From positions 124,001 through 188,000 of the IMG/VR virus record IMGVR_UViG_3300024308_000188: a DNA stretch of 64,000 nucleotides, one strand, 5' to 3'. Below, piece by piece: positions 525 through 37,805 of this stretch. A program made the translations under genes and the position numbers. Position 1 is the first letter of the stretch. Each line of letters starts with the position of its first letter. Under the pieces are notes generated by a model that did not search any database, was not told the DNA's origin, and worked only from the letters and a program-made list of their open reading frames with translations.

Positions 525-599
<75 letters not shown>

Positions 600-2867: not shown

Positions 2868-3307
2868 GAATATTATGCCACTTAAACAGCCCTAGACTCA
2901 CATTTTCTGGTGTGCGTTGGACAATGGCCGAAGCCTATCGAAAACTTTCTGATTTTGCAGAACTTAGTTCTGCGGATAAAAATCGAATAGTGGCCGAAGC
3001 AGGACAAGCTACCGTTCGCGTATTTTCAAGCGTATTCATTGATAAAGATCTTGTTACTGAGATTACTTTCCTACCTACCAATGAAATGACTTTGCAGCAA
3101 ATTGAAGAATACGAAATTCTATCTGTCGATCTTTCCGATGAAAAATTAAAACCTGCCGAACTCAGTGCTTTGATTGATCGCATATCAAATCCCGATAAAG
3201 GCAAGATAATGATTTTATCTGGAACCAAAGTTAAAGAAGCTCCGAGGCTTTCTCCTTCTTTAACACGCGCAATTAAAAAAGCACTGAAAATAAAACATCC
3301 AAGTTAG
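2864..3307 (+). CDS. hypothetical protein
   Basis: ATGA overlap with tmk stop; 147 aa. Confidence 0.7.
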   Translation: MRILCHLNSPRLTFSGVRWTMAEAYRKLSDFAELSSADKNRIVAEAGQATVRVFSSVFIDKDLVTEITFLPTNEMTLQQIEEYEILSVDLSDEKLKPAELSALIDRISNPDKGKIMILSGTKVKEAPRLSPSLTRAIKKALKIKHPS

Positions 3308-3310
3308 ATC

Positions 3311-3342
3311 AAAAAAGGGAACCTCTTTCGGGGTTCCCTTTT
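3311..3342. terminator. bidirectional intrinsic terminator
   Basis: AAAAAAGGGAACCTC-TTTC-GGGGTTCCCTTTT between convergent genes. Confidence 0.85.
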
Positions 3343-3346
3343 GCAT

Positions 3347-3550
3347 TTATTCTGACAGTTGTTTAAAGCGATCTAAAAATTGACCGTCCTTGGCTTTTTC
3401 TGGACTTGCCAATAGTAATGTTGCAAGTCTGTATATTCCACGTTGTTTGTTATCACTGCTATTACGCAATTCAAAATTTTCTGCAATTGACTTTTCAAGA
3501 TCCTCCAGAGTTTTAGTTCCTTCGATCACTTCTTGAATAACTTCTTTCAT
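3347..3550 (-). CDS. hypothetical protein (67 aa, isolated minus-strand gene)
   Basis: AAGGAG RBS 7 nt before ATG (MKEVIQEVIEG); converges on the bidirectional terminator. Confidence 0.75.
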   Translation of the reverse strand: MKEVIQEVIEGTKTLEDLEKSIAENFELRNSSDNKQRGIYRLATLLLASPEKAKDGQFLDRFKQLSE

Positions 3551-3629
3551 AATAATCTCCTTTAGTAGTACCCTTAAATTACTAACAAGTATGACCTTCA
3601 AATTTAACAAAAATCGTTGAAAGTTGCTG

Positions 3630-3687
3630 AACTGATCCAAGTGTGTCAAAAATAGCTATATACATGATCCTACATTTTTGCTATAAT
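3630..3687 (+). promoter_or_regulatory. conserved composite promoter, copy 1
   Basis: ACTGATCCAAGTGTGTCAAAAA, then 32 nt from TGTCAA to TATAAT (3682-3687). Confidence 0.8.
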
Positions 3688-3726
3688 AGGCACATTGAAA
3701 CAGCGAAGAATCTACGAGGTATTAAA

Positions 3727-4053
3727 ATGAAAGTGTCGGTATCAAATAAAAAGTTTGTTAGAAGCTGCGGTGTAGGTTTGACAGAAGTTAAACTGCTGGA
3801 TTTTATTAAATTAGATGCAGCTTTATTGGGAAAAGATCCTTTACTAGATTCTGAAACATTCTATCAGGTTATATCTATTCAGGAGTTAAATAAAAGTTAT
3901 ATTGAAAGTTTGGATGCTTTTTGTCCACAATCTTTCGTACTCGTTCTTTTAGATAACCATGTTCGCAGAACCGCAAAAGGCTCTTTTGAAAAACTGTGTT
4001 TTTCAGTAGAAATAACTGAAGATGAACTTTACAATGTAACAGTTAAGAAGTAA
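3727..4053 (+). CDS. hypothetical protein
   Basis: GAGG RBS before MKVSVSNKK. Confidence 0.7.
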   Translation: MKVSVSNKKFVRSCGVGLTEVKLLDFIKLDAALLGKDPLLDSETFYQVISIQELNKSYIESLDAFCPQSFVLVLLDNHVRRTAKGSFEKLCFSVEITEDELYNVTVKK

Positions 4054-4063
4054 GGAAAAGTTT

Positions 4064-4435
4064 ATGAATGATTTAATTAAAGTAGCACCGGTTGTTGAAG
4101 GTGAGTTGATAGTTGATCCTATTGAATACTCGATTACTATTGAACAAATACAATCTTTTTTAGTCAGGACGATGAATCAACCTGTATCTACACGCATCAG
4201 ATTTTACAATGATGTTATTTTTGAAAAATATTCTTACATTCATTTTGATGAAGAAAACGGATGGCAATTCTATCACGGTCATGATGAAAAGTTTATGCCT
4301 TGGTCTTGGGTAGATGACATTGAAGAAATCTATCGTGATTGTGATATTCAAGAAATACTTGATTACAACGATGGTTGGGTATTTTACGATCTTGACGGTG
4401 GCCGTAATAAACAACTTGTGTTGGGTGATGTATGA
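4064..4435 (+). CDS. hypothetical protein
   Basis: AAGGA RBS; 123 aa. Confidence 0.75.
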   Translation: MNDLIKVAPVVEGELIVDPIEYSITIEQIQSFLVRTMNQPVSTRIRFYNDVIFEKYSYIHFDEENGWQFYHGHDEKFMPWSWVDDIEEIYRDCDIQEILDYNDGWVFYDLDGGRNKQLVLGDV

Positions 4436-4827
4436 TCAAAAAGTTTGTTGATAACCTGCGAAATTACTTTCGGTGGAAAGACGGCAGACAAGGAACCGGA
4501 TATAAAAAGTTTGAGATTTTAATCAGCAAGCGCTTTAATCTGGATTTTCATATTCTGCGCTATGAAGCCGGAAGCAGCATTCCATACCACTTTGATCGTG
4601 TTGGTAAGGATTACGAACACCATAGAATCAACATTGTGATTTTTCCTGCAAAAGTTGGCGGTGAATTTCGTTATGATCAATTCAATAAGTTTGGTCATAA
4701 AAACAAGGTTACACACTTCGGCCCGTTAGTTTATTTTCGACCTGATTTAATTGGACACTCTGTTTCTTACATTGAGTCTGGCACTCGTTATGTATTATCA
4801 ATTGGTTTTCTGAAAAAGGTGAAATAA
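4432..4827 (+). CDS. 2OG-Fe(II) dioxygenase superfamily protein
   Basis: LRYEAGSSIPYHFD (HxD), GGEF, HSVSYIESGTRYVL (distal His and Arg). Confidence 0.82.
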   Translation: MIKKFVDNLRNYFRWKDGRQGTGYKKFEILISKRFNLDFHILRYEAGSSIPYHFDRVGKDYEHHRINIVIFPAKVGGEFRYDQFNKFGHKNKVTHFGPLVYFRPDLIGHSVSYIESGTRYVLSIGFLKKVK

Positions 4828-4828
4828 C

Positions 4829-5440
4829 ATGAAAGACTTAACAAACAAAATGGTTGAAGTTTCTCGTTGGTTAGCATTGCAAAGTACATTTTTATCAAGG
4901 GGTTTGCGTTCTTTGGCCGATGCTGAAAAGTTGTGGCAAGCTTTTGAAGGCAAGTATGCTGATTCAGAAGATTCCCGTGAAAAACGAATTGAGATCTTGG
5001 GTTACGATCCAATCGATTTAACAGCTGAAAAAATCTCTACTGGAAAGAAACCAACTGTAAGTACGGCAGATCGTTTATTACCAAAGACCTGCTATTTTGT
5101 CGGTGAGGATGGAGTTATTTTTTCTATTTACCCACGCGATTTTAAAACTAGCGAAGGACGTTACATTATTCGCACCAACTTTGCTGGCTACAACGGATTG
5201 ATTTACATTCAAGGAAATGAAGTAAACGCGATTGCACCTGCCGATGAAAACGGCCAAAGTTTGATCCTGAATAGTTATCAGCTGTGGACATCATTGCCAG
5301 AGTTGGCTGTTGAAATAGATTCTGACAAGACTAAATTGGATGCAAACTTTTTAGCCGAATTCGACAAAATGAAACATGCAATGTATGTTTCAATGGTTGG
5401 AAAAGAAATGGCCGATTCTATCTTTGATTTTGAGCAATAA
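4829..5440 (+). CDS. hypothetical protein
   Basis: 203 aa ORF abutting the previous gene. Confidence 0.75.
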   Translation: MKDLTNKMVEVSRWLALQSTFLSRGLRSLADAEKLWQAFEGKYADSEDSREKRIEILGYDPIDLTAEKISTGKKPTVSTADRLLPKTCYFVGEDGVIFSIYPRDFKTSEGRYIIRTNFAGYNGLIYIQGNEVNAIAPADENGQSLILNSYQLWTSLPELAVEIDSDKTKLDANFLAEFDKMKHAMYVSMVGKEMADSIFDFEQ

Positions 5441-5444
5441 CATC

Positions 5445-5529
5445 AACTAAACCAAGTGTGTCAAAAATAGGGGTGGCTTCGGCTGCCCTTTTTTGGTATA
5501 ATGTATTCAATGGTTAAGGCAAGAACCAT
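5445..5529 (+). promoter_or_regulatory. composite promoter copy 2 with embedded terminator and AGGCAA leader hairpin
   Basis: CCAAGTGTGTCAAAAA; GGGTGGC-TTCG-GCTGCCC-TTTTTT inside the spacer; TATAAT 5497-5502; ATGGTT-aaggcaag-AACCAT. Confidence 0.85.
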
Positions 5530-5562
5530 GTCAAATCTTGCCAAACATAAGAGAATCTAGTT

Positions 5563-5970
5563 ATGTCACAAGCACGAATCAATTTGAAAAGTTTAATGCG
5601 CGTTACACTGAAAGATCGTAAAGGCACTTTCACTATACTGTCTTTTCGTTTTTCATCGAATCCAACTAAAACCATGATCACTTGCATGGCGGATTCTGAC
5701 GACGAAATTTGTCATACCACGGAAGAAAATGTCGAAAAAGTTGTTTGCTACGATATTCGCAGCAATGGCTTGCAGGAAAGTACGGTCATGAACTATCTGA
5801 CTGACGATAAACATTTTGATGTTAATGATCCTGAAGCTGACATCTACGCTGCGGTTTCAGATGCGCTAAGTGCCAAAGGTGCTAACCGAATCAAAGACGA
5901 ATTCCAGCGCCAAATAAACACACTGGACTACGATTCGATCAAAGAAAAGTTGGTAGCTCTGGCTCAGTAA
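5563..5970 (+). CDS. hypothetical protein
   Basis: 135 aa ORF downstream of promoter copy 2. Confidence 0.75.
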   Translation: MSQARINLKSLMRVTLKDRKGTFTILSFRFSSNPTKTMITCMADSDDEICHTTEENVEKVVCYDIRSNGLQESTVMNYLTDDKHFDVNDPEADIYAAVSDALSAKGANRIKDEFQRQINTLDYDSIKEKLVALAQ

Positions 5971-6017
5971 AATCATTCGGTGGCTTTCGGGCCACCAACT
6001 TTTTGGGAGAAAAGTTT

Positions 6018-6707
6018 ATGCGTAAACTTACCACGGAAGTAGTTTTTCAAGTGCTTCATTTGCTGATGCAATCAACTAAGGCTATGCCTGAAGTTTCTTT
6101 GCAGGGAAGTCGCGTGTACATTTTCGGCAAACTTTTTGCACAATCAAATGAGGCTCGTGAAATTCTCAGACTGTGTGCAAAGCAATGTCACAGGCAAGAA
6201 CGAGCTGAACCAACTTTACCGACTGTCGCAAGTAAGTTTTTCATGGATCGTTATGAGAACGATTTTATCAAGACAGTCGTTCAAAATACAGCGACAGGTC
6301 GAATTACTGAATTTACTTTGATGGACATTACTATCGGTCTTGCGCCTGAAGCAAGTTATGATGTTTTCGATCAAACGATGGAAGCCAACGCTTTTTCTCA
6401 GTACCTGAAGTTTCATGTGACACAAGCTCATACAAAAGTTTGTTTCGCAAAGAATATCGATATGAGAATCAATCATGGTTTACCTATCGGCCTTAGCATT
6501 CACCAACTGGTCAACAAAAAAGTTGGTGTTTTTCTCAGTAACGATCTGGTCAATGTTGACGTTCTTTCTTACACAGATTTGAAAGATGTTGCTAAAACTC
6601 GTGATGGACGTAAGCAACCTTTTGCCCTCGACATACAAGTTTTGTGTGAAGGCAAAAAACTTTTCATCAAGTCAAATTTAATAAGCAGTTTAGTTGCTGA
6701 TAAATAA
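6018..6707 (+). CDS. hypothetical protein
   Basis: GGAG RBS before MRKLTTE. Confidence 0.75.
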   Translation: MRKLTTEVVFQVLHLLMQSTKAMPEVSLQGSRVYIFGKLFAQSNEAREILRLCAKQCHRQERAEPTLPTVASKFFMDRYENDFIKTVVQNTATGRITEFTLMDITIGLAPEASYDVFDQTMEANAFSQYLKFHVTQAHTKVCFAKNIDMRINHGLPIGLSIHQLVNKKVGVFLSNDLVNVDVLSYTDLKDVAKTRDGRKQPFALDIQVLCEGKKLFIKSNLISSLVADK

Positions 6708-6718
6708 CCGGAGAATCT

Positions 6719-7507
6719 ATGAAGTTATTCAAATTAGAATGTAACAAACCACAGAAAAACGGCTCAAGCTTACCTCTGCAAATTTTGTCGCTGGTGAAAC
6801 GCCTTACTCTTGGTGATGTTTATGATGTGGTAATGAACATAGAAAACATTACCAAAGACGTATCTGATTGTGAACCCGAAAACTATGTTTATCGGATCAC
6901 ACTGCTTTCAGCGCAAAACGAAATTTCTTATGTTGATGGAAATATCGACGAAGTATATTCTGCTTTAAAAGTGGTTGTTGCTGATCTTCGTAAGCTGGAA
7001 ATGAATTCCACAATTTTTGCAGACTGGATATTAAAAGGCATGGCCGCTGATATTTTATCGCACGATGCGCTTGACGATCTGGACTTGCCGGAAATTGCCA
7101 ATGAACTTTGTGAAGGTCTTGACCAGCTGGATCTGGATATTAACTTTGATGATATATCCAATCTTGTTAGTATCGAACTGGAAAAGTTTAAGGTATTTGC
7201 TTTAGCCGCGATGAAAACAAAATTCGTGTTTTTAGATGAAAACAAAATCGAAGAGTTTTCATCAGCTACCGAAATTGTTGACTTCTTTACCAAAAATAAA
7301 AATGTAGGAATGCCTGCATCCATTTACGTAACGAACGATCAATTGAATATTAAAAATTCAACAGCCGCTTTCCGTCAGATCAGTCAGATTCTTACTGATA
7401 ACTTCGGGCCGACTGCGGTAAAACGTCAGAAGAAAGTTGATAAAGCTTTTATTGTTGCATCTATTGAAGATGCGTTGGCTTCAGCCTTGAATTACGTGCG
7501 TTCTTAA
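6719..7507 (+). CDS. hypothetical protein
   Basis: GGAG RBS; 262 aa. Confidence 0.75.
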   Translation: MKLFKLECNKPQKNGSSLPLQILSLVKRLTLGDVYDVVMNIENITKDVSDCEPENYVYRITLLSAQNEISYVDGNIDEVYSALKVVVADLRKLEMNSTIFADWILKGMAADILSHDALDDLDLPEIANELCEGLDQLDLDINFDDISNLVSIELEKFKVFALAAMKTKFVFLDENKIEEFSSATEIVDFFTKNKNVGMPASIYVTNDQLNIKNSTAAFRQISQILTDNFGPTAVKRQKKVDKAFIVASIEDALASALNYVRS

Positions 7508-7558
7508 AACTAAACTGAGGGGAACAGAAGTTCCCCTACCGCTTGAAAGGAAAATCAA

Positions 7559-8314
7559 ATGCGACAATTATATACCGTACCAAACAAACCTGCTACTGCG
7601 GATTTATCAAGCTTAATAAAGATCATGTATGATCAACAAGCGCGGATTAGTATCTCAGGCAGTTATCTTGGTGAGTGTCTTTATGAACCTGACAGTTTAG
7701 CAACTTTAATAGTTCGTGGCACTATAAAGATTAGTGTTGAAAAAGTTTATCAGTTGTTCAACGTGACTTCACGAAAAATGTTCGTTGAAGAAAACAAGGT
7801 TATCATTATTAATAACTCTTGTCACTTACACGTTGAGCTTATTTGGGATGGTTCGTTTCCGACTATTGACGAAGAACGCATCTACAAAATAAAATGTTTG
7901 TTGAACTGTAGTAATTACAGTCCAGACCCAAGTATATCAGTATCGCCACGAGCGGCACTTGATGTACTGAAAGATGATTTAGAAAATTACATAGATCATC
8001 TGAATGAAGTTTTAGAGTTTGAAGGCAAATCTTATTCTGCACACACTCTGAAAAACTTTAACTATGATATGCGGTTTGGTCTTAATCTTTTTAGCATTCA
8101 AAAAGGATCGCGCATAACATATCTTGACCGTGGCAAGTTGAAATCTGCTACGGTTGTAAATTTCAATCCGGTAAACTTTGCACTGATTAAACAGGAAGGT
8201 ATGCCGACACGAGATCTTCATTTGATCAACATTGAGTTTAAAGAAGGCGGTTATATGTCTTACAAAACTCTTTACTTAAATCAGATTGTCGCAATAGGAG
8301 GCAATAATGAATAG
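7559..8314 (+). CDS. hypothetical protein
   Basis: AAGGA RBS; 251 aa. Confidence 0.75.
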   Translation: MRQLYTVPNKPATADLSSLIKIMYDQQARISISGSYLGECLYEPDSLATLIVRGTIKISVEKVYQLFNVTSRKMFVEENKVIIINNSCHLHVELIWDGSFPTIDEERIYKIKCLLNCSNYSPDPSISVSPRAALDVLKDDLENYIDHLNEVLEFEGKSYSAHTLKNFNYDMRFGLNLFSIQKGSRITYLDRGKLKSATVVNFNPVNFALIKQEGMPTRDLHLINIEFKEGGYMSYKTLYLNQIVAIGGNNE

Positions 8315-8987
8315 CAAACAAAAAATTATTGCGGATAATCTGGTTATGGTTAAACGCATTGCCAACAGTTTAATTGGCAAACTTTCCGCGAGTATACAGC
8401 TGGATGATTTAATCCAAGCTGGTATGCTTGGAATACTGGAGTCGATTGATCGTTATGATTCAAACTCTGGCACTTCTTTTCAAACTTTTGCTGGAATTCG
8501 AGTTTACGGTTCAATGTTAGACGAGGCCAGAAAACTAGGTTGGATTCCTAAAAATGTTTGTGCAGAAGCTCGTAAACTAAATGAAGTGCGTTCTGCATTA
8601 GAGCAGAAGTTTTTGCGCGTTCCAACAAATATTGAAGTTGCTCATGAACTGAATATTTCTATCGAAGAGTTTAATAAACTCGAACGTGAAACACACAGCA
8701 TTCATGTGTTACTTGACAGTGAACTCAATGAAAGCAACTTTGACGGTTTTTGCACTGAAGTGGATTTTGTGGATCGTCAGTGCGAGGTCACAAAGTTAGG
8801 ATCTGCTTTAAAAGTATTCGTATCAAAACTGCCAAAGCAGGAATCTATTGTAGTTAATCTTTACTATATGCGCGATCTTAACATGGAAGAGATTGGAAAT
8901 CGTATGGAACTTTGTGTGCCTCGCATAAGTAATCTTCATAAACAAGCATTGAAAAGAATGCAATTAAACATGCGTTCTTGGGTATAA
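8307..8987 (+). CDS. fliA: RNA polymerase sigma factor, FliA/WhiG (sigma28) family
   Basis: Region 2 LDDLIQAGMLGILESIDRYD..GTSFQTFAGIRVYGSMLDEARKLGWIPK, region 3 PTNIEVAHEL, region 4 LNMEEIGNRMELCVPRISNLHKQALKRM; GGAGG RBS. Confidence 0.9.
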   Translation: MNSKQKIIADNLVMVKRIANSLIGKLSASIQLDDLIQAGMLGILESIDRYDSNSGTSFQTFAGIRVYGSMLDEARKLGWIPKNVCAEARKLNEVRSALEQKFLRVPTNIEVAHELNISIEEFNKLERETHSIHVLLDSELNESNFDGFCTEVDFVDRQCEVTKLGSALKVFVSKLPKQESIVVNLYYMRDLNMEEIGNRMELCVPRISNLHKQALKRMQLNMRSWV

Positions 8988-8997
8988 GGAAAGTACA

Positions 8998-9588
8998 ATG
9001 AAATTTTATCATAACTTAAAGTTTAAAATTCTTGTGTTCTTTAACAACTTAAGCTTCAAACTCAACTTCATTATACACATGAACAGTTTAAGGTTAAGTC
9101 TGAACGACGATCTTGTCAATAAATCTGAAGAACAGGATTTGATAGTCGTGTATTCACGCATAGACAGATTCTTGCAAAACAATTTGTTTATAGAAAAACA
9201 TATAGCAGGTATGGTTGCCACTGATAAACAAGGTCATAAAATGTCTTATCAAGATCGCACCATGCGTTGGCTTCCCATGATTTTCGTATTGATTATGCAC
9301 TACATGGTTCAAAGCGAAAGTCCTTTCGATAAGACTACTGTAAATCAGATAATGAAACTTATAAACAAAGACGTAAATCAAACTTACGTTGTGGACGTTT
9401 CAACTATTGGGTTGCAATCTTTTAACGACCAAATGCTTTGGCATCAGTTTGTTTTGCACTCAAGGATCTTTTATGCACTTGGCTTATTGATGCAGCAATG
9501 CGACTTAGTTGACTCTAAATTTCTTGCTGGAACCAGATCTAAATCTATTGTCTGTTCAGAAGAGAATCAGCCAGAACCTGCGGAGTAG
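8998..9588 (+). CDS. hypothetical protein
   Basis: AAGGA RBS; 196 aa. Confidence 0.7.
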   Translation: MKFYHNLKFKILVFFNNLSFKLNFIIHMNSLRLSLNDDLVNKSEEQDLIVVYSRIDRFLQNNLFIEKHIAGMVATDKQGHKMSYQDRTMRWLPMIFVLIMHYMVQSESPFDKTTVNQIMKLINKDVNQTYVVDVSTIGLQSFNDQMLWHQFVLHSRIFYALGLLMQQCDLVDSKFLAGTRSKSIVCSEENQPEPAE

Positions 9589-9591
9589 TTT

Positions 9592-9873
9592 ATGAACTCT
9601 GATAAGTTTAATGCGTACATAGTTTCTGTTACCGAATTCGATCACGGTATGTCTCGTCCAGATGGACACATTGTTTGCTTTGATGTTGAAGAAGGTAAAA
9701 AGTTTGCTATTGCAAAACAAGGCTACGTTTACAAAGATGCTGATGTTCGCAGTGAAATATCTGGACAGTTTAAGCGCTGCTTACTTAGTCCTATTGGCAT
9801 CGAAACCGTTCAAAAATTTAATGGCTTGGTTTGGTCTAACGATATAATCAAGCACGTAATGATCATCGAATAA
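9592..9873 (+). CDS. hypothetical protein
   Basis: GGAG RBS; 93 aa. Confidence 0.7.
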   Translation: MNSDKFNAYIVSVTEFDHGMSRPDGHIVCFDVEEGKKFAIAKQGYVYKDADVRSEISGQFKRCLLSPIGIETVQKFNGLVWSNDIIKHVMIIE

Positions 9874-9886
9874 TTGAGGAATTTTT

Positions 9887-10468
9887 ATGAGTACGAATGA
9901 TGTATTAACCTATTTAATGGCTATGCGTTCTTTTCCAACCGACAATAAACTTCGCACAAATATAGTTAAACACTGCGCCACTGTATTAGGTGAATTAACT
10001 TTACCTACTGACGGTGAATCAATAAGAATCAACGATTCTTTTGAAAGCAAAGTTCGCAAAGAAGTATTTGCGGAATTAAAGAAGATGCGTTCTGCTCATT
10101 TGGTGACTGCGGTTGTGATGCGTAATTTTTTGCAGTTTGTCGAACTTGTGTCCTTTGATACAGACAAAGTATTGCTGCAAACTTTATTACGCACAGTTTA
10201 TCTTGATAATACTTTGCCTGATGATAAAATGACAGGTGTGTTTTATCAAATGGTTTTGGCTGATGTCCGAAACAGTTTGAACAAACGCGATGCTACTGCT
10301 GGTGCAGTAACAGCTTCTGCGTTACGCTCAATTGTTTTTACTTATCTGTCTTTGGTTGCCGATGATTCTATGGTAGACAGTTTTGAGATTTATCTGAAGT
10401 TCTCTGACGCTTTCTCTATAGAACAAAAACGTGCTGGTGAAGCCAGCATTTATTGGAGTCCAAAATGA
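9887..10468 (+). CDS. hypothetical protein
   Basis: GAGG RBS; 193 aa. Confidence 0.75.
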   Translation: MSTNDVLTYLMAMRSFPTDNKLRTNIVKHCATVLGELTLPTDGESIRINDSFESKVRKEVFAELKKMRSAHLVTAVVMRNFLQFVELVSFDTDKVLLQTLLRTVYLDNTLPDDKMTGVFYQMVLADVRNSLNKRDATAGAVTASALRSIVFTYLSLVADDSMVDSFEIYLKFSDAFSIEQKRAGEASIYWSPK

Positions 10469-10923
10469 GTCAACTTGATTTTCCGTTAATTCATCCGGTT
10501 CATTTTACAGCCGAAACATTAGAGACAACTTGCCAGCTATTTGCTGAAAGTTTAATCGAAGGCTTTAACGTAGAGCTGGTTGTTGAAGGCCGTGTTTTTC
10601 GTAGCTACTTTTTCGATAAGAAATTTTGGCCGCTTTCTGAAATGGAAGTACGTGTTGCTGCAATGCAAACTTTTGTAAGTAACCTCGGCGTGAATATTTT
10701 AGCTGGCATACATTTAACGAAGCGCAAAGAATTCGATCTTATTGAATTCAATTTGCATTTGGAGTACGCCCAGTTCAATTTGGAAAATGATCAACGGCCT
10801 TATATGTATAATCCAGAAGTGTTAATTTTTGTTTGGATTGTTTACAGACGTATGCCGACAATAACCGCTTCTGAATTTATGAAGTTAATGCAAATTGCGA
10901 TTGCCAATCTGGTAAGGAAATAA
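10465..10923 (+). CDS. hypothetical protein
   Basis: GGAG RBS before MSQLD; ATGA-type overlap. Confidence 0.72.
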   Translation: MSQLDFPLIHPVHFTAETLETTCQLFAESLIEGFNVELVVEGRVFRSYFFDKKFWPLSEMEVRVAAMQTFVSNLGVNILAGIHLTKRKEFDLIEFNLHLEYAQFNLENDQRPYMYNPEVLIFVWIVYRRMPTITASEFMKLMQIAIANLVRK

Positions 10924-10925
10924 AA

Positions 10926-11669
10926 ATGAACTATCAAATGCTTTCTCTTTTAATCGAAGATTTCCACAAAGAACTGGATCATCAAATTCAATATCTGGTT
11001 TCCGGTGAAACAACCGTGGATCAGTATGATTCTGTTGTTAGCGCTGTCTTTGAAATGTTTGAAGATGAAACCAAAATAACTCAGTATGGTTTCTCTAGTT
11101 TGTCCAAAGGCGGTCGTATTCTCAAGTACCTCAACACCAGACTTTATGCGTCTGACAGCTTGGCAATGCAACAGTATTATCCTGTTATATCCTGCTACAA
11201 ATCAAGCTGCCGGATTATCATGGAAGAAAATATGGCGAACAAAAATGCTTTCATGTCTCGCATCCTTTACTTTATTAATAGCGAACATGAAACGCATTCA
11301 GCTACTGCTGTAGCCAGTTGTTTTGCTGATGCTCCAAATGCAGCTTGGCTTTTTACCTCAAGGTTAGAAGGCGGTTATTTTTCTGTACGTAACTCTACAG
11401 AACTTTGCGTGAAATATTTAAAGAACGAGCTTTATATAAATCCTCGTTTTGGCTTAACTGAGATAATGACTGAGCTTATGGCTTTAAGTGAATTCAGTTT
11501 TTTCTTCCAGAACAATCTTAAGATACTGGAAAATAAATGGTACTTTATGTACGTGGTATGTTCTTTCCTTGAAGAATTTATGCCACACATTTATTTACCG
11601 AATCGCGCTGTATTAAACTACGAAGATAACTTAGTTGACGCATTGCGTAAGTTTAGTGATGGAGAGTAG
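10926..11669 (+). CDS. hypothetical protein
   Basis: 247 aa ORF in the co-oriented run. Confidence 0.72.
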   Translation: MNYQMLSLLIEDFHKELDHQIQYLVSGETTVDQYDSVVSAVFEMFEDETKITQYGFSSLSKGGRILKYLNTRLYASDSLAMQQYYPVISCYKSSCRIIMEENMANKNAFMSRILYFINSEHETHSATAVASCFADAPNAAWLFTSRLEGGYFSVRNSTELCVKYLKNELYINPRFGLTEIMTELMALSEFSFFFQNNLKILENKWYFMYVVCSFLEEFMPHIYLPNRAVLNYEDNLVDALRKFSDGE

Positions 11670-12879: not shown

Positions 12880-12937
12880 AACTGATCTGAGTGCGTCAAA
12901 AATAGACATAGACGCACTTGGTCATTTTTGGTATAAT
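12880..12937 (+). promoter_or_regulatory. composite promoter copy 3
   Basis: ACTGATCTGAGTGCGTCAAAAA, 32 nt spacing, TATAAT 12932-12937. Confidence 0.78.
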
Positions 12938-13004
12938 GGCATCATACAAACAAGGGAAGTGCTGTACTTTCACATGCACAAAAGTTTGTTAGGAGAAGAA
13001 GTAA

Positions 13005-16981: not shown

Positions 16982-17451
16982 TGAAAAAAGCTGGCAATAG
17001 AATTCAAATAACAGCAGAAGTTCAATCGGTAGTTCGTAGTGTTGACTCTCAATTATCTAAGGCAGTTGACAAAGGATTTATAACAGGACAACAAAAAACA
17101 TTGGCCGTTAATCTGATAGGTCGCTCTGCAAATAAAAGGACTAAGAAGAATCTTGGTATTTTACGGCCATTCAAACATGATACAACGAATAAAGAAATGA
17201 TGGGAGAACGTGATTCTGGAAAAATTGCTTTAAGCTTTCCTTTTGCCTTTGTTGATTGTTACGGAACTTTCTGGCTATGCTGTGATTCAGATACTGGTCT
17301 TTATTTAGAATGCAAGATCGATTCTAAATTTGATACTGTTTACACGCAACGCTTTTATTTAAAGGGCAATACAAAAAGTTGTATAAAGAAACTGTGCCGA
17401 TTCTTAGAATCATCGAACAACTTGGAAACTTCTCTTCGTAATCTGAACTAA
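16981..17451 (+). CDS. hypothetical protein
   Basis: TAATG coupling; 156 aa. Confidence 0.72.
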   Translation: MKKAGNRIQITAEVQSVVRSVDSQLSKAVDKGFITGQQKTLAVNLIGRSANKRTKKNLGILRPFKHDTTNKEMMGERDSGKIALSFPFAFVDCYGTFWLCCDSDTGLYLECKIDSKFDTVYTQRFYLKGNTKSCIKKLCRFLESSNNLETSLRNLN

Positions 17452-17535
17452 ACCAAGTGTGTCAAAAACAGCGGTTGTTATGAATGGCCGCTTTTGGTAT
17501 AATGTCGTCATTGGTAAGGCAAGAGTGTCTACCAA
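17446..17535 (+). promoter_or_regulatory. composite promoter copy 4 with AGGCAA leader hairpin
   Basis: CCAAGTGTGTCAAAAA; -35 TTGTTA, 17 nt, TATAAT 17498-17503; TTGGTA-aggcaagagtgtc-TACCAA. Confidence 0.85.
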
Positions 17536-22393: not shown

Positions 22394-24103
22394 ATGAAAA
22401 GTATCACAGTTCGTATTACTCACCTTATTGCTGTTGGTGAACTTTTTCAATCTCAAACAAACAAAGCTATGGCCGCTATCATCCCAAAAGATGATGCTTT
22501 GCCAACTTACAAAATTGAAACCGATGATTACAGACTGATTGAACAACTTTCTGGCGCTGTACTTTTGGTTCCTAAAAATCCGATTGATGCTGATTGCTCA
22601 AGTACAATTCAGCTGACCGAAATGGAAGTTGGTTATGGTGACTCTATCTATCCGGTTTATTCTGCGGTTACGCATGACAAAAAATCTGGAAAAACTCGTC
22701 CAATCTTTTTTATTGCGGGTATGGTTCAAACAATTTATGGTAGTTCTTTGTTCTTGCCGACTTTGACCGTACCGGCTGATGAAGTTGATATTGCGGCTTT
22801 GGTAAAAGATCCTGAAGAATCTGCAACAGGATTTGAAAAGCCACAGGCTTCATCTTTAGAGTTTATTCCAACAGACGAAGGCGCAAAAGTTGTTGCGCCT
22901 GAACCCGTTGTCGAAAACAGCGAGTCCAATGTAGAACCTGAAGAAGTTGAGTTTGATTTGATTCCAACAACTTCAGCTTTACTCGAAACTGATGCTACTC
23001 AATTGAATAAAGATGCTTTTGATGCCGCTGTTGAAAATTCAGGCTACGCGCATTTGTTTTCTTTGGATAGTTACAAAGTTTACGCGAATATTCAAAACGC
23101 TGAGTTTATCCAACAGTTAACAGAATCTTTAAGAGAAAGCGGTGATGTCAGCGCTTTCATTTATGAAGCTTTTGTTGGCCTTACAACAGACGATACAAGT
23201 TTAGTTTGGGATCAGGAATTTTGCGCCAACTATTTGGCCCCTGTTCTGTCACACTTGACCGCTTTGGCTGAAGGCCAGACGCGCGTTATTAAAGTTAGTA
23301 GTCAGTTTGATTGTACTTCGTTTGAAAGTTTTTGTGCTGCCTTACGAATCATAAAACATTTAAGTCTGCCGTTTGAATCGTCGCTTGATGCTCCAACAGT
23401 TGAAGCTTTCTTGCTTGATACAGCTTATGTAACAAACGAAGTTTTGGGCGCAATCCTAAACATTTATGTTGCGATCAATGAAGGTAAAACTACAACAGCT
23501 TGGTCTAAGCGCGGTAAAGCGTGTATTGTTTTAAGCTTGCTCGGCTTTATTGATGTGAATCCAGAAACACGATTCACAGAAGATGGTGCATTGTATGCTG
23601 TTGACCTGATCCGAACTTATTACACAACAGAAGATCAGTTTGAAGATAGCGGCTGCACTAATTTACTTCGCTATGTTCCTGAAGTTATTGACCAACTTTT
23701 CGAAGCTTTAAAAGTTCGCAAGCTGGTTGACAATCGCTGTTTATCCGAAACATCTATCGAGAAACGCGCTAAAATTGTTCGCGCTGTTTTGAATGATGTT
23801 ATTACAGTGAACGCTTTATCTTCGTGCGTACCAGACGTTTACGAAGCTTTATGTAAAGTTGAAAAACGTCTGTCTGATACTGGAGTTATTGTTGTCGGTG
23901 ATTCATGGTTAGCTCAACTCGAAGCCGCCTTACTTGCGGCTGATGATCTGGATATTGAATTCGCAGAGTATTCCACAAAGACTTTTCCGGTGGCACTGTC
24001 AGTTTGTTCAATCCTTCATCCTGAAATTGAAGTAACTTCTATTAATAGTGTTGATAGCAAAGAACAGCGCGTTAAAAATCTTATTGATGCACTGTTGACC
24101 TAA
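22394..24103 (+). CDS. hypothetical protein, 569 aa
   Basis: AAGGA RBS; long acidic ORF. Confidence 0.82.
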   Translation: MKSITVRITHLIAVGELFQSQTNKAMAAIIPKDDALPTYKIETDDYRLIEQLSGAVLLVPKNPIDADCSSTIQLTEMEVGYGDSIYPVYSAVTHDKKSGKTRPIFFIAGMVQTIYGSSLFLPTLTVPADEVDIAALVKDPEESATGFEKPQASSLEFIPTDEGAKVVAPEPVVENSESNVEPEEVEFDLIPTTSALLETDATQLNKDAFDAAVENSGYAHLFSLDSYKVYANIQNAEFIQQLTESLRESGDVSAFIYEAFVGLTTDDTSLVWDQEFCANYLAPVLSHLTALAEGQTRVIKVSSQFDCTSFESFCAALRIIKHLSLPFESSLDAPTVEAFLLDTAYVTNEVLGAILNIYVAINEGKTTTAWSKRGKACIVLSLLGFIDVNPETRFTEDGALYAVDLIRTYYTTEDQFEDSGCTNLLRYVPEVIDQLFEALKVRKLVDNRCLSETSIEKRAKIVRAVLNDVITVNALSSCVPDVYEALCKVEKRLSDTGVIVVGDSWLAQLEAALLAADDLDIEFAEYSTKTFPVALSVCSILHPEIEVTSINSVDSKEQRVKNLIDALLT

Positions 24104-24160
24104 ACTTTTCTAGGTGTGTCAAAAATGAGTGTTGCCTATTATAGTCTGTTTTGATATAAT
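24102..24160 (+). promoter_or_regulatory. composite promoter copy 5
   Basis: GGTGTGTCAAAAA; -35 TTGCCT, 17 nt, TATAAT 24155-24160. Confidence 0.8.
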
Positions 24161-24186
24161 AGGCACATTCAAACAAAGGAGAAAAC

Positions 24187-24444: not shown

Positions 24445-24861
24445 ATGAAAAAAGAAATTGTTGGAATTCCGGCACTTCAAACATACGCCGAGAAGTTCTT
24501 TGCTAAAGTTCCTGATGCTGACTTTCAAACACTCAGGTTATATGCTGAAAAACGTCCGGCCTTTGCTGAGAACTTAATAACAGCTGGAAAAAGTTTGCGC
24601 TATTCATCAAAAGATTACGCAATCACTTTGACTCGCATCAGTGAAAAAGTTTATCAATTACTTTTGGATCGTATTGATTCCGAAGGTAACTCGCAAAAAG
24701 ATTTATACAGACTTACGCCATTCTATGCAATGCGTTTGTTTGCAAGTTTTGCTATGGCTTGTGTTCCACGCAAATCACGCGATCTTGAATTGGTTCTTGA
24801 TCGTCACCAAGCTAGACGAATTGATCCAAGCGTGTCAAAAACAGTGGTTGATCGACACTAA
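24445..24861 (+). CDS. hypothetical protein
   Basis: 138 aa; 3' end carries promoter copy 6. Confidence 0.7.
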   Translation: MKKEIVGIPALQTYAEKFFAKVPDADFQTLRLYAEKRPAFAENLITAGKSLRYSSKDYAITLTRISEKVYQLLLDRIDSEGNSQKDLYRLTPFYAMRLFASFAMACVPRKSRDLELVLDRHQARRIDPSVSKTVVDRH

Positions 24862-24908
24862 GCTTTTTGGTAAAATACAGTCATTGGTTAAGGCAATAAG
24901 GCCACCAG
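24819..24908 (+). promoter_or_regulatory. composite promoter copy 6 with AGGCAA leader hairpin
   Basis: TGATCCAAGCGTGTCAAAAA; -35 TTGATC, 17 nt, TAAAAT 24871-24876; TGGT-taaggcaataaggcc-ACCA. Confidence 0.75.
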
Positions 24909-25778: not shown

Positions 25779-26030
25779 ATGAGAAAAGAATTAGTTGGTG
25801 CAATCGTCGCTTCTCAATTTAATCAGATTGCGATAGCCGAGGATATTAGTGAAGCCGAAGTTAAGCGTATTGTTAAAAGTTTAAAAGAAGATTACAGTGA
25901 GCCGCAGCAAGATTCTTGGCACGATGAAGGTATAGCTACTCGTTATCGTGCAACAAAAAAGTTGATTCCAAAAAGTTTACGTAGAGCAAAACGTGCTGTA
26001 CAAAAGAAGGCACGTAAAGCTCAACGATAA
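25779..26030 (+). CDS. hypothetical protein with a basic C-tail
   Basis: AAGGA RBS; 83 aa. Confidence 0.72.
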   Translation: MRKELVGAIVASQFNQIAIAEDISEAEVKRIVKSLKEDYSEPQQDSWHDEGIATRYRATKKLIPKSLRRAKRAVQKKARKAQR

Positions 26031-26032
26031 TC

Positions 26033-26090
26033 AACTGATCGAGGTGTGTCAAAAATAGTGGTTGTTATGAGCTACCACTTTTGATATAAT
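26033..26090 (+). promoter_or_regulatory. composite promoter copy 7
   Basis: ACTGATCGAGGTGTGTCAAAAA; TTGTTA, 17 nt, TATAAT 26085-26090; spacer hairpin AGTGGT/ACCACT. Confidence 0.85.
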
Positions 26091-26151
26091 TACACCATCG
26101 AAACAACAGAGAAAGTTTGTCTGAAGTTTCGTTCCCGATAAAAAGTTTGTT

Positions 26152-26241
26152 ACTAAACAAAGTGTGTCAAAAATAGTGGTTGTTATGAGCTGCCACTTTT
26201 AGTATAATGTATACATTGGTTAGGCAATAAAGCTCAGCCAA
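26152..26241 (+). promoter_or_regulatory. composite promoter copy 8 (tandem with copy 7) with AGGCAA leader hairpin
   Basis: ACTAAACAAAGTGTGTCAAAAA; TTGTTA, 17 nt, TATAAT 26203-26208; TTGGTT-aggcaataaagctc-AGCCAA. Confidence 0.85.
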
Positions 26242-26971: not shown

Positions 26972-28435
26972 ATGAAAGTAACTCCTAATGAAGCTTTAGT
27001 CGGTAAAAAAATTACTCTGTTAGATGGTTCGCGTGACACTATCACAGAGACAACTAAAACTGGTTACAAACTGCAAGGTCGTCGTAAAGGCGTTGCCGCA
27101 AATTGTGTTGTACGTGATGGTCAAAAGTTTGAAGAAATCGATCAGCCTGTTGACGGTGCAAAAGTTGGTTCTGGTTATGTGACTTTGCCAAAAGTTAAAA
27201 AAGCTCCGGCCAAAGCCGACAAAAAAGCTCCAGCAAAAGCTCCGGCCAAAGCCGACAAAAAACCAGCTGGCAAAAAAGTTGCTGAAACAAAACCTGCACG
27301 TAAGTCTGCCGCCAAAGTTGTGGAAGAACTGGAAGAAGTTGACGCCATTACTATCGAAAATGTTACTGAACAGTCAGGTGAAATTCGTTCAGCGGTTGAA
27401 GAAATTCTGCGCGAACATTTGCCAAAACGCTTTGACAATTTCGTTAGCGTAAACACTGGCGCACAGATCGAAGAAGAAGGTGGCGATCCGACCGTTATTC
27501 TTTGCATGTCAGATTTAACTTTTGACATTCCTGAAGAAGAGGAAGAGTTAGAAGAAGAACTAGAAGAACTGGAAGAAGAGGAAGAAGCTGTAGAATTTAA
27601 CTTCAGCGAAGAAACTTTATCTCTGGTTGAAGAAGGTCTGTGGGAAAGTCAGGTTGCCGCGAATTCAAAAGTTGCTCAACGTGTGTTTGCCGCACTGCAA
27701 CTGGACGAAGAAGAAATGGAAGAGTTTGTCATCGGTTCACGCTTAGTTGACGAAGATGGTAAAACTTACTACTTTGCTGGTATGCAACGTGATCCAGTTC
27801 GTTTGATTCTGGAAGATGAAAACGGTGAACCAAAAGATGTTGGTTCAAAAGACTTTGAAAGTTTAGACTTTGTTCCTTTCTCTGAAGAAGAGGAAACAGA
27901 AGTTGATGAACTGGAGGAAGAAGAAGTTGATGAACTGGACGAGCTGGACGAAGCCGAAGAAGAGGAAGAAGAATCTGAAGATGATTCAAATCTTTTAGAA
28001 GGCTGTGAATCTGCTGAAGAAGCCGCTGACGCACTGGCCGATTACTCTGAATCAGAAATCCGCACTTTCATCTTTGGTGCTGTTGATTTAGGTGAAGAAG
28101 GTAGCGAAGATTACGAAGCTACTGTTGATTACATCGAAGGTTTGGATAAAGAAGAACTGATCGAATACGTGGTCAGCCTGTTCTTTGAAGAAACTGACGA
28201 AGAGGAAGAGGAAGAAGAAGTTGAGGAAGGCATTACTGCCGAGGAAATCAACGAAATCCGCGACTTCGATTCTTTACTGGAAATTGCAAAACAATACAGC
28301 GATAAAGTTGGTAAAGTTTCGCAGAACATCCGTCACTTCCGTAAAATCAAAGCGTTGAAAGCTTTACTGATTGAAAAGTTGGTTGACGCTGAAGAAACTA
28401 CTGGCGAAGAGGACTTCGAGTTCGAGAGCGAGTAA
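26972..28435 (+). CDS. bipartite low-complexity protein: histone-like KKAPAK repeats plus a very acidic C-terminal two-thirds
   Basis: KKAPAKADKKAPAKAPAKADKK followed by multiple poly-Glu tracts; AAGGA RBS before MKVTPNE. Confidence 0.82.
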   Translation: MKVTPNEALVGKKITLLDGSRDTITETTKTGYKLQGRRKGVAANCVVRDGQKFEEIDQPVDGAKVGSGYVTLPKVKKAPAKADKKAPAKAPAKADKKPAGKKVAETKPARKSAAKVVEELEEVDAITIENVTEQSGEIRSAVEEILREHLPKRFDNFVSVNTGAQIEEEGGDPTVILCMSDLTFDIPEEEEELEEELEELEEEEEAVEFNFSEETLSLVEEGLWESQVAANSKVAQRVFAALQLDEEEMEEFVIGSRLVDEDGKTYYFAGMQRDPVRLILEDENGEPKDVGSKDFESLDFVPFSEEEETEVDELEEEEVDELDELDEAEEEEEESEDDSNLLEGCESAEEAADALADYSESEIRTFIFGAVDLGEEGSEDYEATVDYIEGLDKEELIEYVVSLFFEETDEEEEEEEVEEGITAEEINEIRDFDSLLEIAKQYSDKVGKVSQNIRHFRKIKALKALLIEKLVDAEETTGEEDFEFESE

Positions 28436-33535: not shown

Positions 33536-34003
33536 ATGAGTAAACAAGCTATTTCCGCACTGAACAAAAGTGCAACTGCTTCTACAAAGCAAGCCGCTGC
33601 TTTACGCAAACAAGCAGAAGCTTTAGTTAAAGCCGCTGAACAAGCAGAAGCAGTTGCTGCCGCTACAAAACAGCAAGCCGAAGCTTTAGCAGGTAATCCA
33701 GCTCCTGCCGCAAAAGCTCCTGCCAAAGCTGACAAAAAAGCTCCGGTAGCCGATAAGAAAGCTCCGGCCAAAGCGGATAAGAAAGCTGACAAAAAAGCTG
33801 ACAAAAAAGCTCCGGCCAAAGCGGATAAGAAAGCTGATAAAAAGTCTGCTGACAAAAAAGCTCCGGCCAAGTCAGACAAGAAAGCTGACAAAAAGCCAGC
33901 TGATAAAAAGTCTGCTGACAAAAAAGCTCCGGCCAAGTCAGACAAGAAAGCTGACAAAAAGCCTTCTACAAAAAAGAAAAATAACGACTTCGATTTTGAA
34001 TAA
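33536..34003 (+). CDS. histone H1-like / AlgP-like Lys-Ala-Pro DNA-condensing protein
   Basis: N-terminal Ala-rich coiled coil followed by repeated KKAPAKADKK / KADKK units. Confidence 0.8.
   Translation: MSKQAISALNKSATASTKQAAALRKQAEALVKAAEQAEAVAAATKQQAEALAGNPAPAAKAPAKADKKAPVADKKAPAKADKKADKKADKKAPAKADKKADKKSADKKAPAKSDKKADKKPADKKSADKKAPAKSDKKADKKPSTKKKNNDFDFE
33712..33963 (+). repeat. tandem imperfect repeats encoding KKAPAK(A/S)DKK
   Basis: AAAGCTCCGGCCAA, GCTGACAAAAA and GATAAGAAAGC repeated. Confidence 0.85.
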
Positions 34004-37707: not shown

Positions 37708-37765
37708 ACTGATCCAAGTGTGTCAAAAATCAGGGGTTTATTTCAATACCTTATTTTGGTATAAT
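37707..37765 (+). promoter_or_regulatory. composite promoter copy 9 (upstream of gyrA)
   Basis: AACTGATCCAAGTGTGTCAAAAA; 33 nt from TGTCAA to TATAAT 37760-37765. Confidence 0.78.
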
Positions 37766-37805
37766 CCGGCCTGTTCGCTTACACAAAAAGTTGGTAAACT
37801 AAACA

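What the first reader, a model, noticed from the sequence alone, without database searches (positions are those of the whole stretch)
8307..8987. Phage-encoded full-length FliA (sigma28) homologue
It resembles gammaproteobacterial FliA across regions 2-4 rather than T4 gp55-type phage sigmas. It could rewire host flagellar/chemotaxis genes or transcribe a phage subset. Region 4 is altered (LCVPRISNLH where FliA has VGESRVSQLH), which may change -35 recognition or FlgM sensitivity.
Basis: partly seen in the sequence, partly recalled or inferred. Interest (0 to 1): 0.62.

Follow-up and report, generated by a model that had tools for sequence, protein, structure and literature searches.

The report
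Retuned FliA-like sigma on jumbo phage
A roughly 320-kb groundwater jumbo phage carries an intact, strongly selected relative of the bacterial flagellar sigma factor FliA inside a swappable block of early genes. The residues that let FliA read flagellar promoters are replaced, so it probably steers the host RNA polymerase to other promoters that are still unknown.

Summary
Window 8307-8987 (+) is an intact 226-aa ORF with sigma-70 regions 2, 3 and 4. Its best family is FliA/WhiG, and its best solved relatives are P. aeruginosa and E. coli FliA. The window is phage DNA: it holds a large terminase, a portal protein and topoisomerase II. A 99%-identical gene sits in a complete 319.5-kb relative.

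The gene is not a recent host capture. It forms a small clade of four metagenomic sequences on a very long branch. It keeps the core-binding and DNA-melting residues. It has replaced the nearly invariant sigma-28 residues that read the -35 element and the extended -10 element. dN/dS against an 81%-identical homologue is 0.06.

The gene lies in an ~8.8-kb block of 15 ORFs that is missing from a syntenic relative. Relatives that lack it keep the lineage's own 339-aa sigma and the same phage promoter motifs. I found no promoter class of its own, and the complete genome has no FlgM.

Best reading: an accessory, probably early, phage sigma with changed promoter specificity and unknown targets. Simple rewiring of host flagellar genes is unlikely but not excluded.

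The parts
8307..8987 (+). FliA-family (group 3) sigma factor gene, 226 aa. Sigma-2 is about residues 1-80, sigma-3 about 81-132, the disordered 3/4 linker about 133-161, and sigma-4 about 162-222.
   Evidence: AF2 model with three helical domains, mean pLDDT 75.8, low-confidence linker 133-161; dN/dS 0.06 against the homologue in L002
8296..8301 (+). Shine-Dalgarno AGGAGG, 5 nt before the ATG. The start overlaps the end of the upstream ORF 7559..8314 by 8 nt, which fits an operon arrangement.
8916..8972 (+). Region 4.2 recognition helix (residues 204-222). Pro205 and Asn209 stand where sigma-28 has the -35-reading Ser224 and Gln228. Lys212 stands where most FliA have Ser.
8544..8573 (+). Start of region 3.0 (residues 80-89, IPKNVCAEAR). 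Lys82 replaces R97, the extended -10 reader. Cys85 replaces H100 and Ala86 replaces R101. R104 is kept as Arg89.
5444..5502 (+). Nearest upstream promoter cassette ('class A'). It has a conserved A-rich box (5444-5470), a GC hairpin with a T-run (5469-5490) and an extended -10 TGGTATAAT (5494-5502). It is of the host sigma-70 type and has no -35 element. It is the likely source of the transcript that reaches the sigma gene.
   Evidence: That it drives 8307-8987 is inferred. A terminator-like hairpin at 5979-5996 lies in between.
2868..11634 (+). Accessory early-gene block of 15 ORFs: the sigma gene plus 14 ORFs without family assignment. It has no syntenic counterpart in the relative G002, where about 1.5 kb stands in its place. 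Class A cassettes lie at about 3643 and 5458, with the next at about 12930.

Best explanation
The ORF encodes a working alternative sigma factor that descends from the FliA/WhiG (sigma-28) family and now belongs to a small, phage-associated clade. The phage has no detectable RNA polymerase of its own. The protein should therefore bind the host core enzyme through its intact region 2.2 and region 4, and melt DNA with the retained sigma-28 -10 core machinery. Its -35 and extended -10 reading residues have been exchanged, so it should select promoters other than the flagellar TAAA-N15-GCCGATAA type. It sits in a dispensable, exchangeable block of early genes behind a host sigma-70-type promoter cassette. 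That makes it an accessory takeover or 'middle' regulator added on top of the lineage's own programme of sigma-70-type early cassettes, a CTGTAAAT class and a TATAATTTAG class, which relatives run with a single 339-aa phage sigma.

Shown: gene integrity, family, purifying selection, the residue pattern, the phyletic pattern and the genomic setting.

Inferred: core binding, early timing and altered specificity.

Unknown: the target promoters and the host.
For: Family and fold.

Core binding: the region 2.2 block DLIQAGMxGxxE is invariant against bacterial FliA.

Retained residues (P. aeruginosa numbering): F/Y76, I79, R80, D87, R90, P96 and R104, which flip -11A and hold -12/-13.

Replaced residues: H36S, R40K, R82Y, D93G, R97K, H100C, R101A, S224P and Q228N. 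Among 42 close bacterial FliA, R82, R97, S224 and Q228 are 42/42. Among 126 family representatives, R97 is R in 116 and Q228 is Q in 120.

Clade: the same pattern is shared by P0002 (81% identity), P0052 (43%) and P0056 (40%). The four form a clade with support 0.96. P0056 lies in a phage-like array of ORFans.

Selection: dN/dS is 0.06.

No phage polymerase: no RNAP beta, beta' or T7-type polymerase was detected.

Sigma genes: only two sigma genes are present in the complete genome.

Accessory status: the block is absent from the syntenic relative G002 and the gene is absent from Erwinia phage Y3.

Other promoter classes: the class B and C motifs and the 339-aa sigma persist in those relatives.

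Setting: a strong RBS and an upstream extended -10 cassette.
Against: K-mer, dyad and seed searches of the 214-kb and 319.5-kb genomes found no cognate promoter class.

There is no expression data. Only fragmentary contigs of uncertain RNA or DNA origin were available.

A terminator-like hairpin lies between the cassette and the gene.

Lys for Arg at position 97 and Asn for Gln at position 228 are chemically mild changes, so partial sigma-28-like specificity cannot be excluded.

Sigma-28-like sites are modestly over-represented: 5 observed against 1.0 expected at 14 or more of 16 matches.

The host is unknown.
Confidence: 0.55

Rival explanations
1. Sigma-28 mimic. The protein keeps FliA specificity and switches on host class III flagellar and chemotaxis genes, or competes there.
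For: Best family and structure matches are FliA. The -10 core readers R80, D87 and R90 are kept. A 15/16 match to TAAAGTTT-N11-GCCGATAA lies in the phage at window 47878-47904 (-), and sigma-28-like sites show a modest excess.
Against: Both base-specific -35 contacts and the extended -10 reader R97 are replaced, along with R82, D93, H36 and H100. These are invariant or nearly so in bacterial FliA, and mutating Q228 or R97 severely impairs transcription. The PRK06986 FliA model scores below its cut-off. The best sigma-28-like site is antisense inside terL, and 3 of 60 random genomes reach the same score.
Confidence: 0.15
2. It reads one of the phage's own abundant promoter classes: class B (aAAACTGTAAAT) or class C (TATAATTTAGT).
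For: Two phage sigmas and two phage-specific motif classes coexist. Class B precedes the replication genes and the 339-aa sigma gene, which would fit a cascade started by an early sigma.
Against: Erwinia phage Y3 and G002 lack this gene and any other region-4 sigma. Y3 still has 41 strand-matched CTGTAAAT copies, one of them 47 nt before its own sigma gene, plus a class C-like motif. G002 has 50 CTGTAAAT copies and 18 class C copies.
Confidence: 0.12
3. Non-transcribing decoy. It soaks up host FlgM, freeing host FliA, or simply competes with host sigmas for core enzyme.
For: Of the sigma-4 FlgM-contact residues, L187, L204, Y206 and L210 are identical and I191V and L200I are conservative. The phage encodes no FlgM. 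The core-binding region is intact.
Against: The DNA-melting residues are under the same conservation as in real sigmas, which a decoy would not need. Clade members P0052 and P0056 have lost FlgM contacts (L210K, A203R, L200Q/M). R40 and R82 are changed. A sigma that blocks core enzyme would also starve the phage's own transcription.
Confidence: 0.1
4. Functionless passenger or decaying gene.
For: It lies in a dispensable block that is absent from relatives.
Against: The frame is intact in three phage genomes and several runs. dN/dS is 0.06 with dS about 1.85. It has a strong RBS.
Confidence: 0.03

Closest known systems
Bacterial FliA / sigma-28 (P. aeruginosa 9wsf/9wsm, E. coli 6pmi, A. aeolicus 1rp3)
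   Same: It has the same three-domain group 3 architecture and length. Identity is 36-39% over the whole protein. Region 2.2, the -11A pocket aromatic residue, R80, D87, R90 and R104, and most sigma-4 FlgM-contact hydrophobic residues are kept.
   Different: It is encoded by a phage, outside any flagellar operon, with no FlgM partner in the genome. S224, Q228, R97, R82, D93, H36 and H100 are replaced. The 3/4 linker is shorter. It sits on a very long branch outside 79 gamma- and betaproteobacterial FliA.
Cellular-type sigma factors of RNAP-less ('group 2') jumbo phages (Iyer et al. 2021, PMC7824862)
   Same: It is carried by a jumbo phage without its own RNA polymerase that relies on phage sigmas to recruit the host enzyme. 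That paper already notes 'more complete' sigmas, probably acquired secondarily from cells.
   Different: The paper describes them as RpoD-like. This one is FliA/WhiG-type, is accessory rather than lineage-wide, and carries a defined set of specificity-residue changes.
Sporulation-type (SigF/SigG-like) sigma factors of Bacillus phages (Schwartz et al. 2022, PMC9429907)
   Same: These are also phage-borne homologues of a host developmental group 3 sigma, thought to redirect a host programme.
   Different: The host clade and sigma subfamily differ. Those proteins mimic host specificity closely enough to alter sporulation, whereas here the specificity residues are replaced. tblastn identity to them is only about 25%.
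T4 gp55 and the lineage's own 339-aa sigma (phrog_17569)
   Same: Both are phage sigmas that retarget host core RNAP. The 339-aa protein is the conserved sigma of this phage lineage.
   Different: gp55-type and phrog_17569 proteins match only region 2. The ORF studied here has regions 2, 3 and 4 and is unrelated beyond the superfamily.

Membership tests
FliA/WhiG sigma-28 family (TIGR02479; PRK06986) | [quoted passage not shown] | tested here: met
   Pfam r2, r3 and r4 all score above their cut-offs. The protein is 226 aa. The AF2 model has three helical domains.
FliA/WhiG sigma-28 family (TIGR02479; PRK06986) | Score at or above the curated family cut-off | tested here: inconclusive
   TIGR02479 scores 189.6 against a cut-off of 189.6, exactly on the line. 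PRK06986 FliA scores 189.4 against 201, below the cut-off.
FliA/WhiG sigma-28 family (TIGR02479; PRK06986) | -10 core and melting residues (Y/F76, I79, R80, D87, R90, R104; P. aeruginosa numbering) | tested here: met
   All are retained: F61, I64, R65, D72, R75 and R89.
FliA/WhiG sigma-28 family (TIGR02479; PRK06986) | Sigma-28 promoter-specificity residues: -35 readers S224 and Q228; extended -10 reader R97; template-strand contacts R82, D93 and H100 | tested here: not met
   The phage protein has P205, N209, K82, Y67, G78 and C85. In bacteria, R82, R97, S224 and Q228 are 42/42 among close FliA. Q228 is 120/126 and R97 is 116/126 among family representatives.
FliA/WhiG sigma-28 family (TIGR02479; PRK06986) | Flagellar gene neighbourhood and an FlgM anti-sigma partner | tested here: not met
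   The neighbours are ORFs without family matches. No FlgM (PF04316) is found in the 214-kb or the complete 319.5-kb genome. Binding to a host FlgM was not decided.
FliA/WhiG sigma-28 family (TIGR02479; PRK06986) | Initiates at TAAA-N15-GCCGATAA promoters | not testable with these tools
   A sequence scan gives only a weak excess and one 15/16 site antisense in terL. This needs in vitro transcription.
FliA/WhiG sigma-28 family (TIGR02479; PRK06986) | Nests among cellular FliA in a tree | tested here: not met
   It joins the backbone of 79 gamma- and betaproteobacterial FliA on a stem of about 5 changes per site. It forms its own four-member clade among 130 representatives. Long-branch effects make the exact position unsure.
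Phage-encoded sigma-70-family factors that retarget host RNAP | Encoded on a bona fide phage genome that lacks its own RNA polymerase | tested here: met
   Terminase, portal and tail sheath are present. No PF00562, PF00623 or PF00940 is found in G000 or G001. Very divergent phiKZ-type subunits could escape these models.
Phage-encoded sigma-70-family factors that retarget host RNAP | Intact determinants for core binding, and selection on the protein | tested here: met
   Region 2.2 is invariant against FliA. dN/dS is 0.06.
Phage-encoded sigma-70-family factors that retarget host RNAP | A cognate phage promoter class | tested here: inconclusive
   No motif class could be assigned to it. Classes A, B and C are explained without it.

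The most novel reading that the evidence does not exclude
The four sequences (this gene, P0002, P0052 and P0056) represent a phage-specific offshoot of the FliA family. Its -35 and extended -10 readers have been re-engineered: R97K in all four, and Q228 to N, L or I. These sigmas would act as mobile 'plug-in' factors that travel in early-gene cassettes and open a promoter class, on the phage or on the host chromosome, that no known sigma reads.
Probability: 0.35. Interest if true: 0.65.

Novelty: new variant of a known kind. Interest (0 to 1): 0.5.

Why it matters
Phage sigma factors are a main way that phages without their own polymerase reprogramme the host. The known ones are either minimal gp55-like proteins or close mimics of host sigmas. 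This case is a complete group 3 sigma that has kept the machinery and changed the reading heads. It sits in an exchangeable early module of an uncultivated ~320-kb phage found in groundwater, wastewater and drinking water. It offers a natural experiment on how few substitutions retarget sigma-28, with positions 97, 224 and 228 as candidates. It also flags a small family of such proteins. It cautions against annotating phage 'FliA' genes as motility regulators.

Tried and rejected
1. Canonical sigma-28 promoters in the phage. GCCGATAA-like -10 elements are not enriched in intergenic DNA. The full-consensus scan gives one 15/16 site and a weak excess that may reflect composition.

2. De novo motif searches. 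I ran k-mers, gapped dyads, seeds with mismatches and inspection of unexplained intergenic regions on the 214-kb and 319.5-kb genomes. They returned only class A cassettes, class B, class C, terminators and ribosome-binding sites.

3. The class A upstream box as the sigma's site. Rejected, because G002 lacks the sigma and still has the box. Its position at about -45 and its A-rich sequence fit an UP-like element; that reading is my inference.

4. Assigning class B to this sigma. Rejected, because Y3 and G002 have class B without the gene.

5. Donor or host from phylogeny. No donor emerged, and bacterial FliA are all about equally distant at 33-39%. The careful tree search did not finish, so a quick tree was used.

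6. Complex prediction with E. coli FlgM residues 40-97. It gave no verdict (score 0.01), which is not evidence either way.

7. Expression from public runs. Only contigs were available, possibly DNA, with no starts or strands.

8. Family searches of neighbouring ORFs in Pfam and PHROGs. Nothing usable came back.

9. Literature searches for phage FliA homologues or the CTGTAAAT motif. Nothing relevant was found.

10. Near-DNA search in INPHARED. No match.

Full report
**What is there.** Window 8307-8987 (+) is an uninterrupted 226-codon ORF. An AGGAGG lies 5 nt before its ATG, and the start overlaps the end of the preceding ORF by 8 nt. Pfam finds sigma-70 regions 2, 3 and 4, each above its cut-off. 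Among NCBIfam models the FliA/WhiG subfamily is clearly best, at 189.6 bits and E 6e-56. WhiG scores 132, SigB/F/G 91 and RpoD 67. However, 189.6 is exactly the curated cut-off, and the narrower FliA model PRK06986 falls short at 189.4 against 201. The best solved relatives are P. aeruginosa FliA (E 5e-40), E. coli FliA (1e-36) and A. aeolicus FliA (6e-23), aligned end to end. An AlphaFold2 model gives three helical domains and a disordered 3/4 linker at residues 133-161, with mean pLDDT 75.8.

**The replicon.** The window is G000:C1:124001-188000 of a 214.5-kb IMG/VR virus record.
- It holds a 983-aa large terminase, a portal protein and both topoisomerase II subunits. Elsewhere the record holds a tail sheath, DNA polymerase, clamp loader, primase and SSB.
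- The terminase is about 40% identical to those of Erwinia phage vB_EamM_Y3 and the Dickeya JA phages, which are jumbo myoviruses of about 260 kb.
- A 319,518-bp IMG/VR genome, G001, has terminal repeats and is rated complete. It is 97-99.5% identical in DNA and shows that the window's record lacks about 105 kb.
- No RNAP beta, beta' or T7-type polymerase is detectable.
- The DNA recurs in subsurface, wastewater and drinking-water metagenomes.
- The host is unknown.

**Relatives of the protein.** The word-index search and the exhaustive search give the same picture.
- One 81% homologue, P0002, lies on a 3-kb contig with the same downstream genes.
- Two intermediate relatives follow: P0052 at 43% and P0056 at 40%.
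- Below them are thousands of cellular FliA at 40% identity or less.
- P0056 lies in a 9.6-kb array of unidirectional ORFs without families, next to a terminator and a TTGACA-N17-TATAAT promoter. That looks like another phage early region.
- The four sequences form a clade with support 0.96.
- Against 79 named gamma- and betaproteobacterial FliA, the phage pair sits on a stem of about 5 changes per site with no nearest donor.
- In 50,697 deposited phage genomes nothing exceeds 30% identity.
- dN/dS between the window gene and P0002 is 0.06, with dS about 1.85. The protein is under strong purifying selection.

**Which residues are kept and which are changed.** I mapped the protein onto the P. 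aeruginosa sigma-28/FlgM crystal structure and open-complex cryo-EM structure (PMC12784957). I used the gap-free alignment, and numbering below is P. aeruginosa.

Kept:
- The region 2.2 core-binding block.
- The -11A stacking aromatic residue Y76, present as Phe as in most gammaproteobacteria.
- I79, R80 (contacts -12G), L86, D87, R90 (contacts -13G), P96 and R104.

Replaced:
- H36 to S, R40 to K, R82 to Y, D93 to G and R101 to A.
- R97 to K. R97 reads the two guanines of the extended -10 element.
- H100 to C. H100 stacks on the flipped template -11T.
- In region 4.2, S224 to P and Q228 to N. These are the only two base-specific -35 contacts in that structure.
- S231 to K.

Conservation in bacteria:
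- In the 42 closest bacterial FliA, R82, R97, S224 and Q228 are invariant.
- In 126 representatives of the wider family, R97 is R in 116 and Q228 is Q in 120.
- According to the paper, Q228A strongly lowers transcription and motility, and mutation of R97 is severely defective.

All four clade members share H36S, R40K and R97K and have lost Q228, to N, N, L and I. The pattern reads as 'engine kept, reading heads exchanged'. That is the basis for predicting a changed promoter specificity.

**FlgM.**
- In the window protein, the sigma-4 hydrophobic contacts L187, L204, Y206 and L210 are identical. I191V and L200I are conservative, and A203 is N. The sigma-2 contacts R40 and R82 are changed.
- In P0052 and P0056 several of these contacts are lost, for example L210K.
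- The complete phage genome has no FlgM.
- A complex prediction with E. coli FlgM gave no verdict and is not evidence either way.
- FlgM sensitivity stays open.

**The phage's promoter landscape.** Three motif classes stand out in intergenic DNA.
- *Class A.* It has 9-13 copies, all in the early-looking blocks of small ORFs. Each copy is a conserved A-rich box, a GC hairpin with a T-run, and then an extended -10 TGGTATAAT without a -35 element. This is a host sigma-70-type cassette. One copy at window 5444-5502 heads the run of genes that contains the sigma gene.
- *Class B.* The motif is aAAACTGTAAAT, about 35 nt before start codons. It precedes DNA polymerase, clamp loader, primase, an SbcC-like protein, SSB, endonuclease VII, an exonuclease, the portal and the phage's second sigma gene.
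- *Class C.* The motif is TATAATTTAGT or GATAATTT. It precedes the tail sheath gene, among others.

The second sigma is 339 aa, belongs to phrog_17569 and matches region 2 only. It lies outside the window at G000 116501-117520.

**The comparative test.**
- Erwinia phage Y3 has a 45% homologue of the 339-aa sigma. It has no FliA/WhiG-type sigma and no region-4-bearing sigma at all.
- Y3 nevertheless carries 41 strand-matched copies of CTGTAAAT, one of them 47 nt before its sigma gene. It also carries a class C-like motif, gCTAATTTa.
- A closer relative is G002, 286.6 kb and rated complete, whose lineage sigma is 70% identical. It also lacks the FliA-like gene and still has class A boxes, 50 CTGTAAAT copies and class C.

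The lineage's transcription programme therefore does not need this protein.

G001 and G002 are syntenic around the locus. The 15 ORFs at window about 2868-11634, the sigma gene among them, have no counterpart there, and about 1.5 kb stands in their place. The block lies among class A cassettes. From memory, this recalls the promoter-stem-loop cassettes reported to mediate module shuffling in T4-type phages. I did not test that parallel.

**Search for its own promoters.**
- Neither canonical sigma-28 elements nor any further repeated motif could be tied to the protein.
- A scan of G001 with TAAAGTTT-N10-12-GCCGATAA finds 5 sites at 14 or more of 16 matches, against 1.0 expected from first-order Markov genomes.
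- The best site scores 15/16. It lies at window 47878-47904 on the minus strand, antisense inside terL, and is conserved in G001. Three of 60 random genomes reach that score.
- I treat this as a curiosity, not a regulon.

**Conclusion.** The finding is real. It is a FliA-derived sigma factor on a jumbo phage. It is best described as a member of a small phage-associated offshoot of the family, not as a functional FliA orthologue, because the specificity-defining residues, the flagellar context and the narrower family cut-off are not met. It most likely works like other phage sigmas, by redirecting host core RNAP, but as an optional early add-on with an unidentified target set. I put 0.55 on that reading, 0.15 on a true sigma-28 mimic acting on host flagellar genes, about 0.12 on it reading class B or C promoters, 0.10 on a decoy or competitor role, and about 0.03 on a passenger gene. 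The remaining ~0.05 is left for readings not listed here. Phage-borne cellular-type sigmas are already known (PMC7824862; PMC9429907). This is therefore a new variant of a known kind and of moderate interest.

Noticed in passing
window ~3620-3700, 5444-5502, ~12890-12940, ~17440-17510, ~24100-24170, ~24815-24880, ~26030-26100, ~26150-26215, ~37705-37770 (+): A repeated early 'class A' cassette: a conserved box (AACTrAwCCAAGTGTGTCAAAAAyAG), a GC hairpin with a T-run, and an extended -10 TGGTATAAT, often followed by a conserved leader (CATTGGTTAAGGCAA). It recalls the promoter-stem-loop cassettes of T4-type phages. The cassettes lie around the accessory block that holds the sigma gene. The box also occurs in G002.
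   Followed up: partly
window 19607, 31983, 32652, 50233, 54376, 55025 (+); many more in G000/G001: The class B motif aAAACTGTAAAT lies about 35 nt before the starts of replication and recombination genes and the portal. The same 8-mer is strand-matched and abundant in Erwinia phage Y3 (41 copies) and in G002 (50 copies). This looks like a promoter class conserved across this jumbo-phage lineage, probably tied to the phrog_17569 sigma.
   Followed up: partly
window 47878-47904 (-): A near-perfect sigma-28 consensus, TAAAGTTT-N11-GaCGATAA, lies antisense inside the large terminase gene and is conserved in G001. Chance expectation is about 0.05 per genome. No obvious ORF lies downstream.
   Followed up: partly
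G000:C1:116501-117520 (outside the window; L005:1015-2034): A second phage sigma of 339 aa (phrog_17569, E 1e-111) that matches region 2 only. It is followed by a gp32-like SSB with a long Lys/Asp/Glu-rich tail. Homologues are present in Y3 (45% identity) and G002 (70%).
   Followed up: yes
whole record: The window's 214.5-kb record is rated 85% complete by CheckV. It actually lacks about 105 kb relative to the complete 319.5-kb G001 (G001:107973-213264).
   Followed up: yes
G001:C1 ~177500-177580 and ~178310-178400 (-), not in the window: Two copies of a ~35-nt element with an inverted repeat (..GTACATT..AGTGTAC..CAAT.AAAA) lie directly before two adjacent small genes. It may be an operator or an RNA hairpin.
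   Followed up: no
window 525-599 (+): A tRNA-Gly (TCC) gene.
   Followed up: no
window ~27200-27260 and ~33740-33900 (+): Tandem Lys/Ala/Pro-rich coding repeats (AAAGCTCCGGCCAAAGC.GA.AA units) occur in ORFs of the early/middle region. They dominated the dyad statistics.
   Followed up: no
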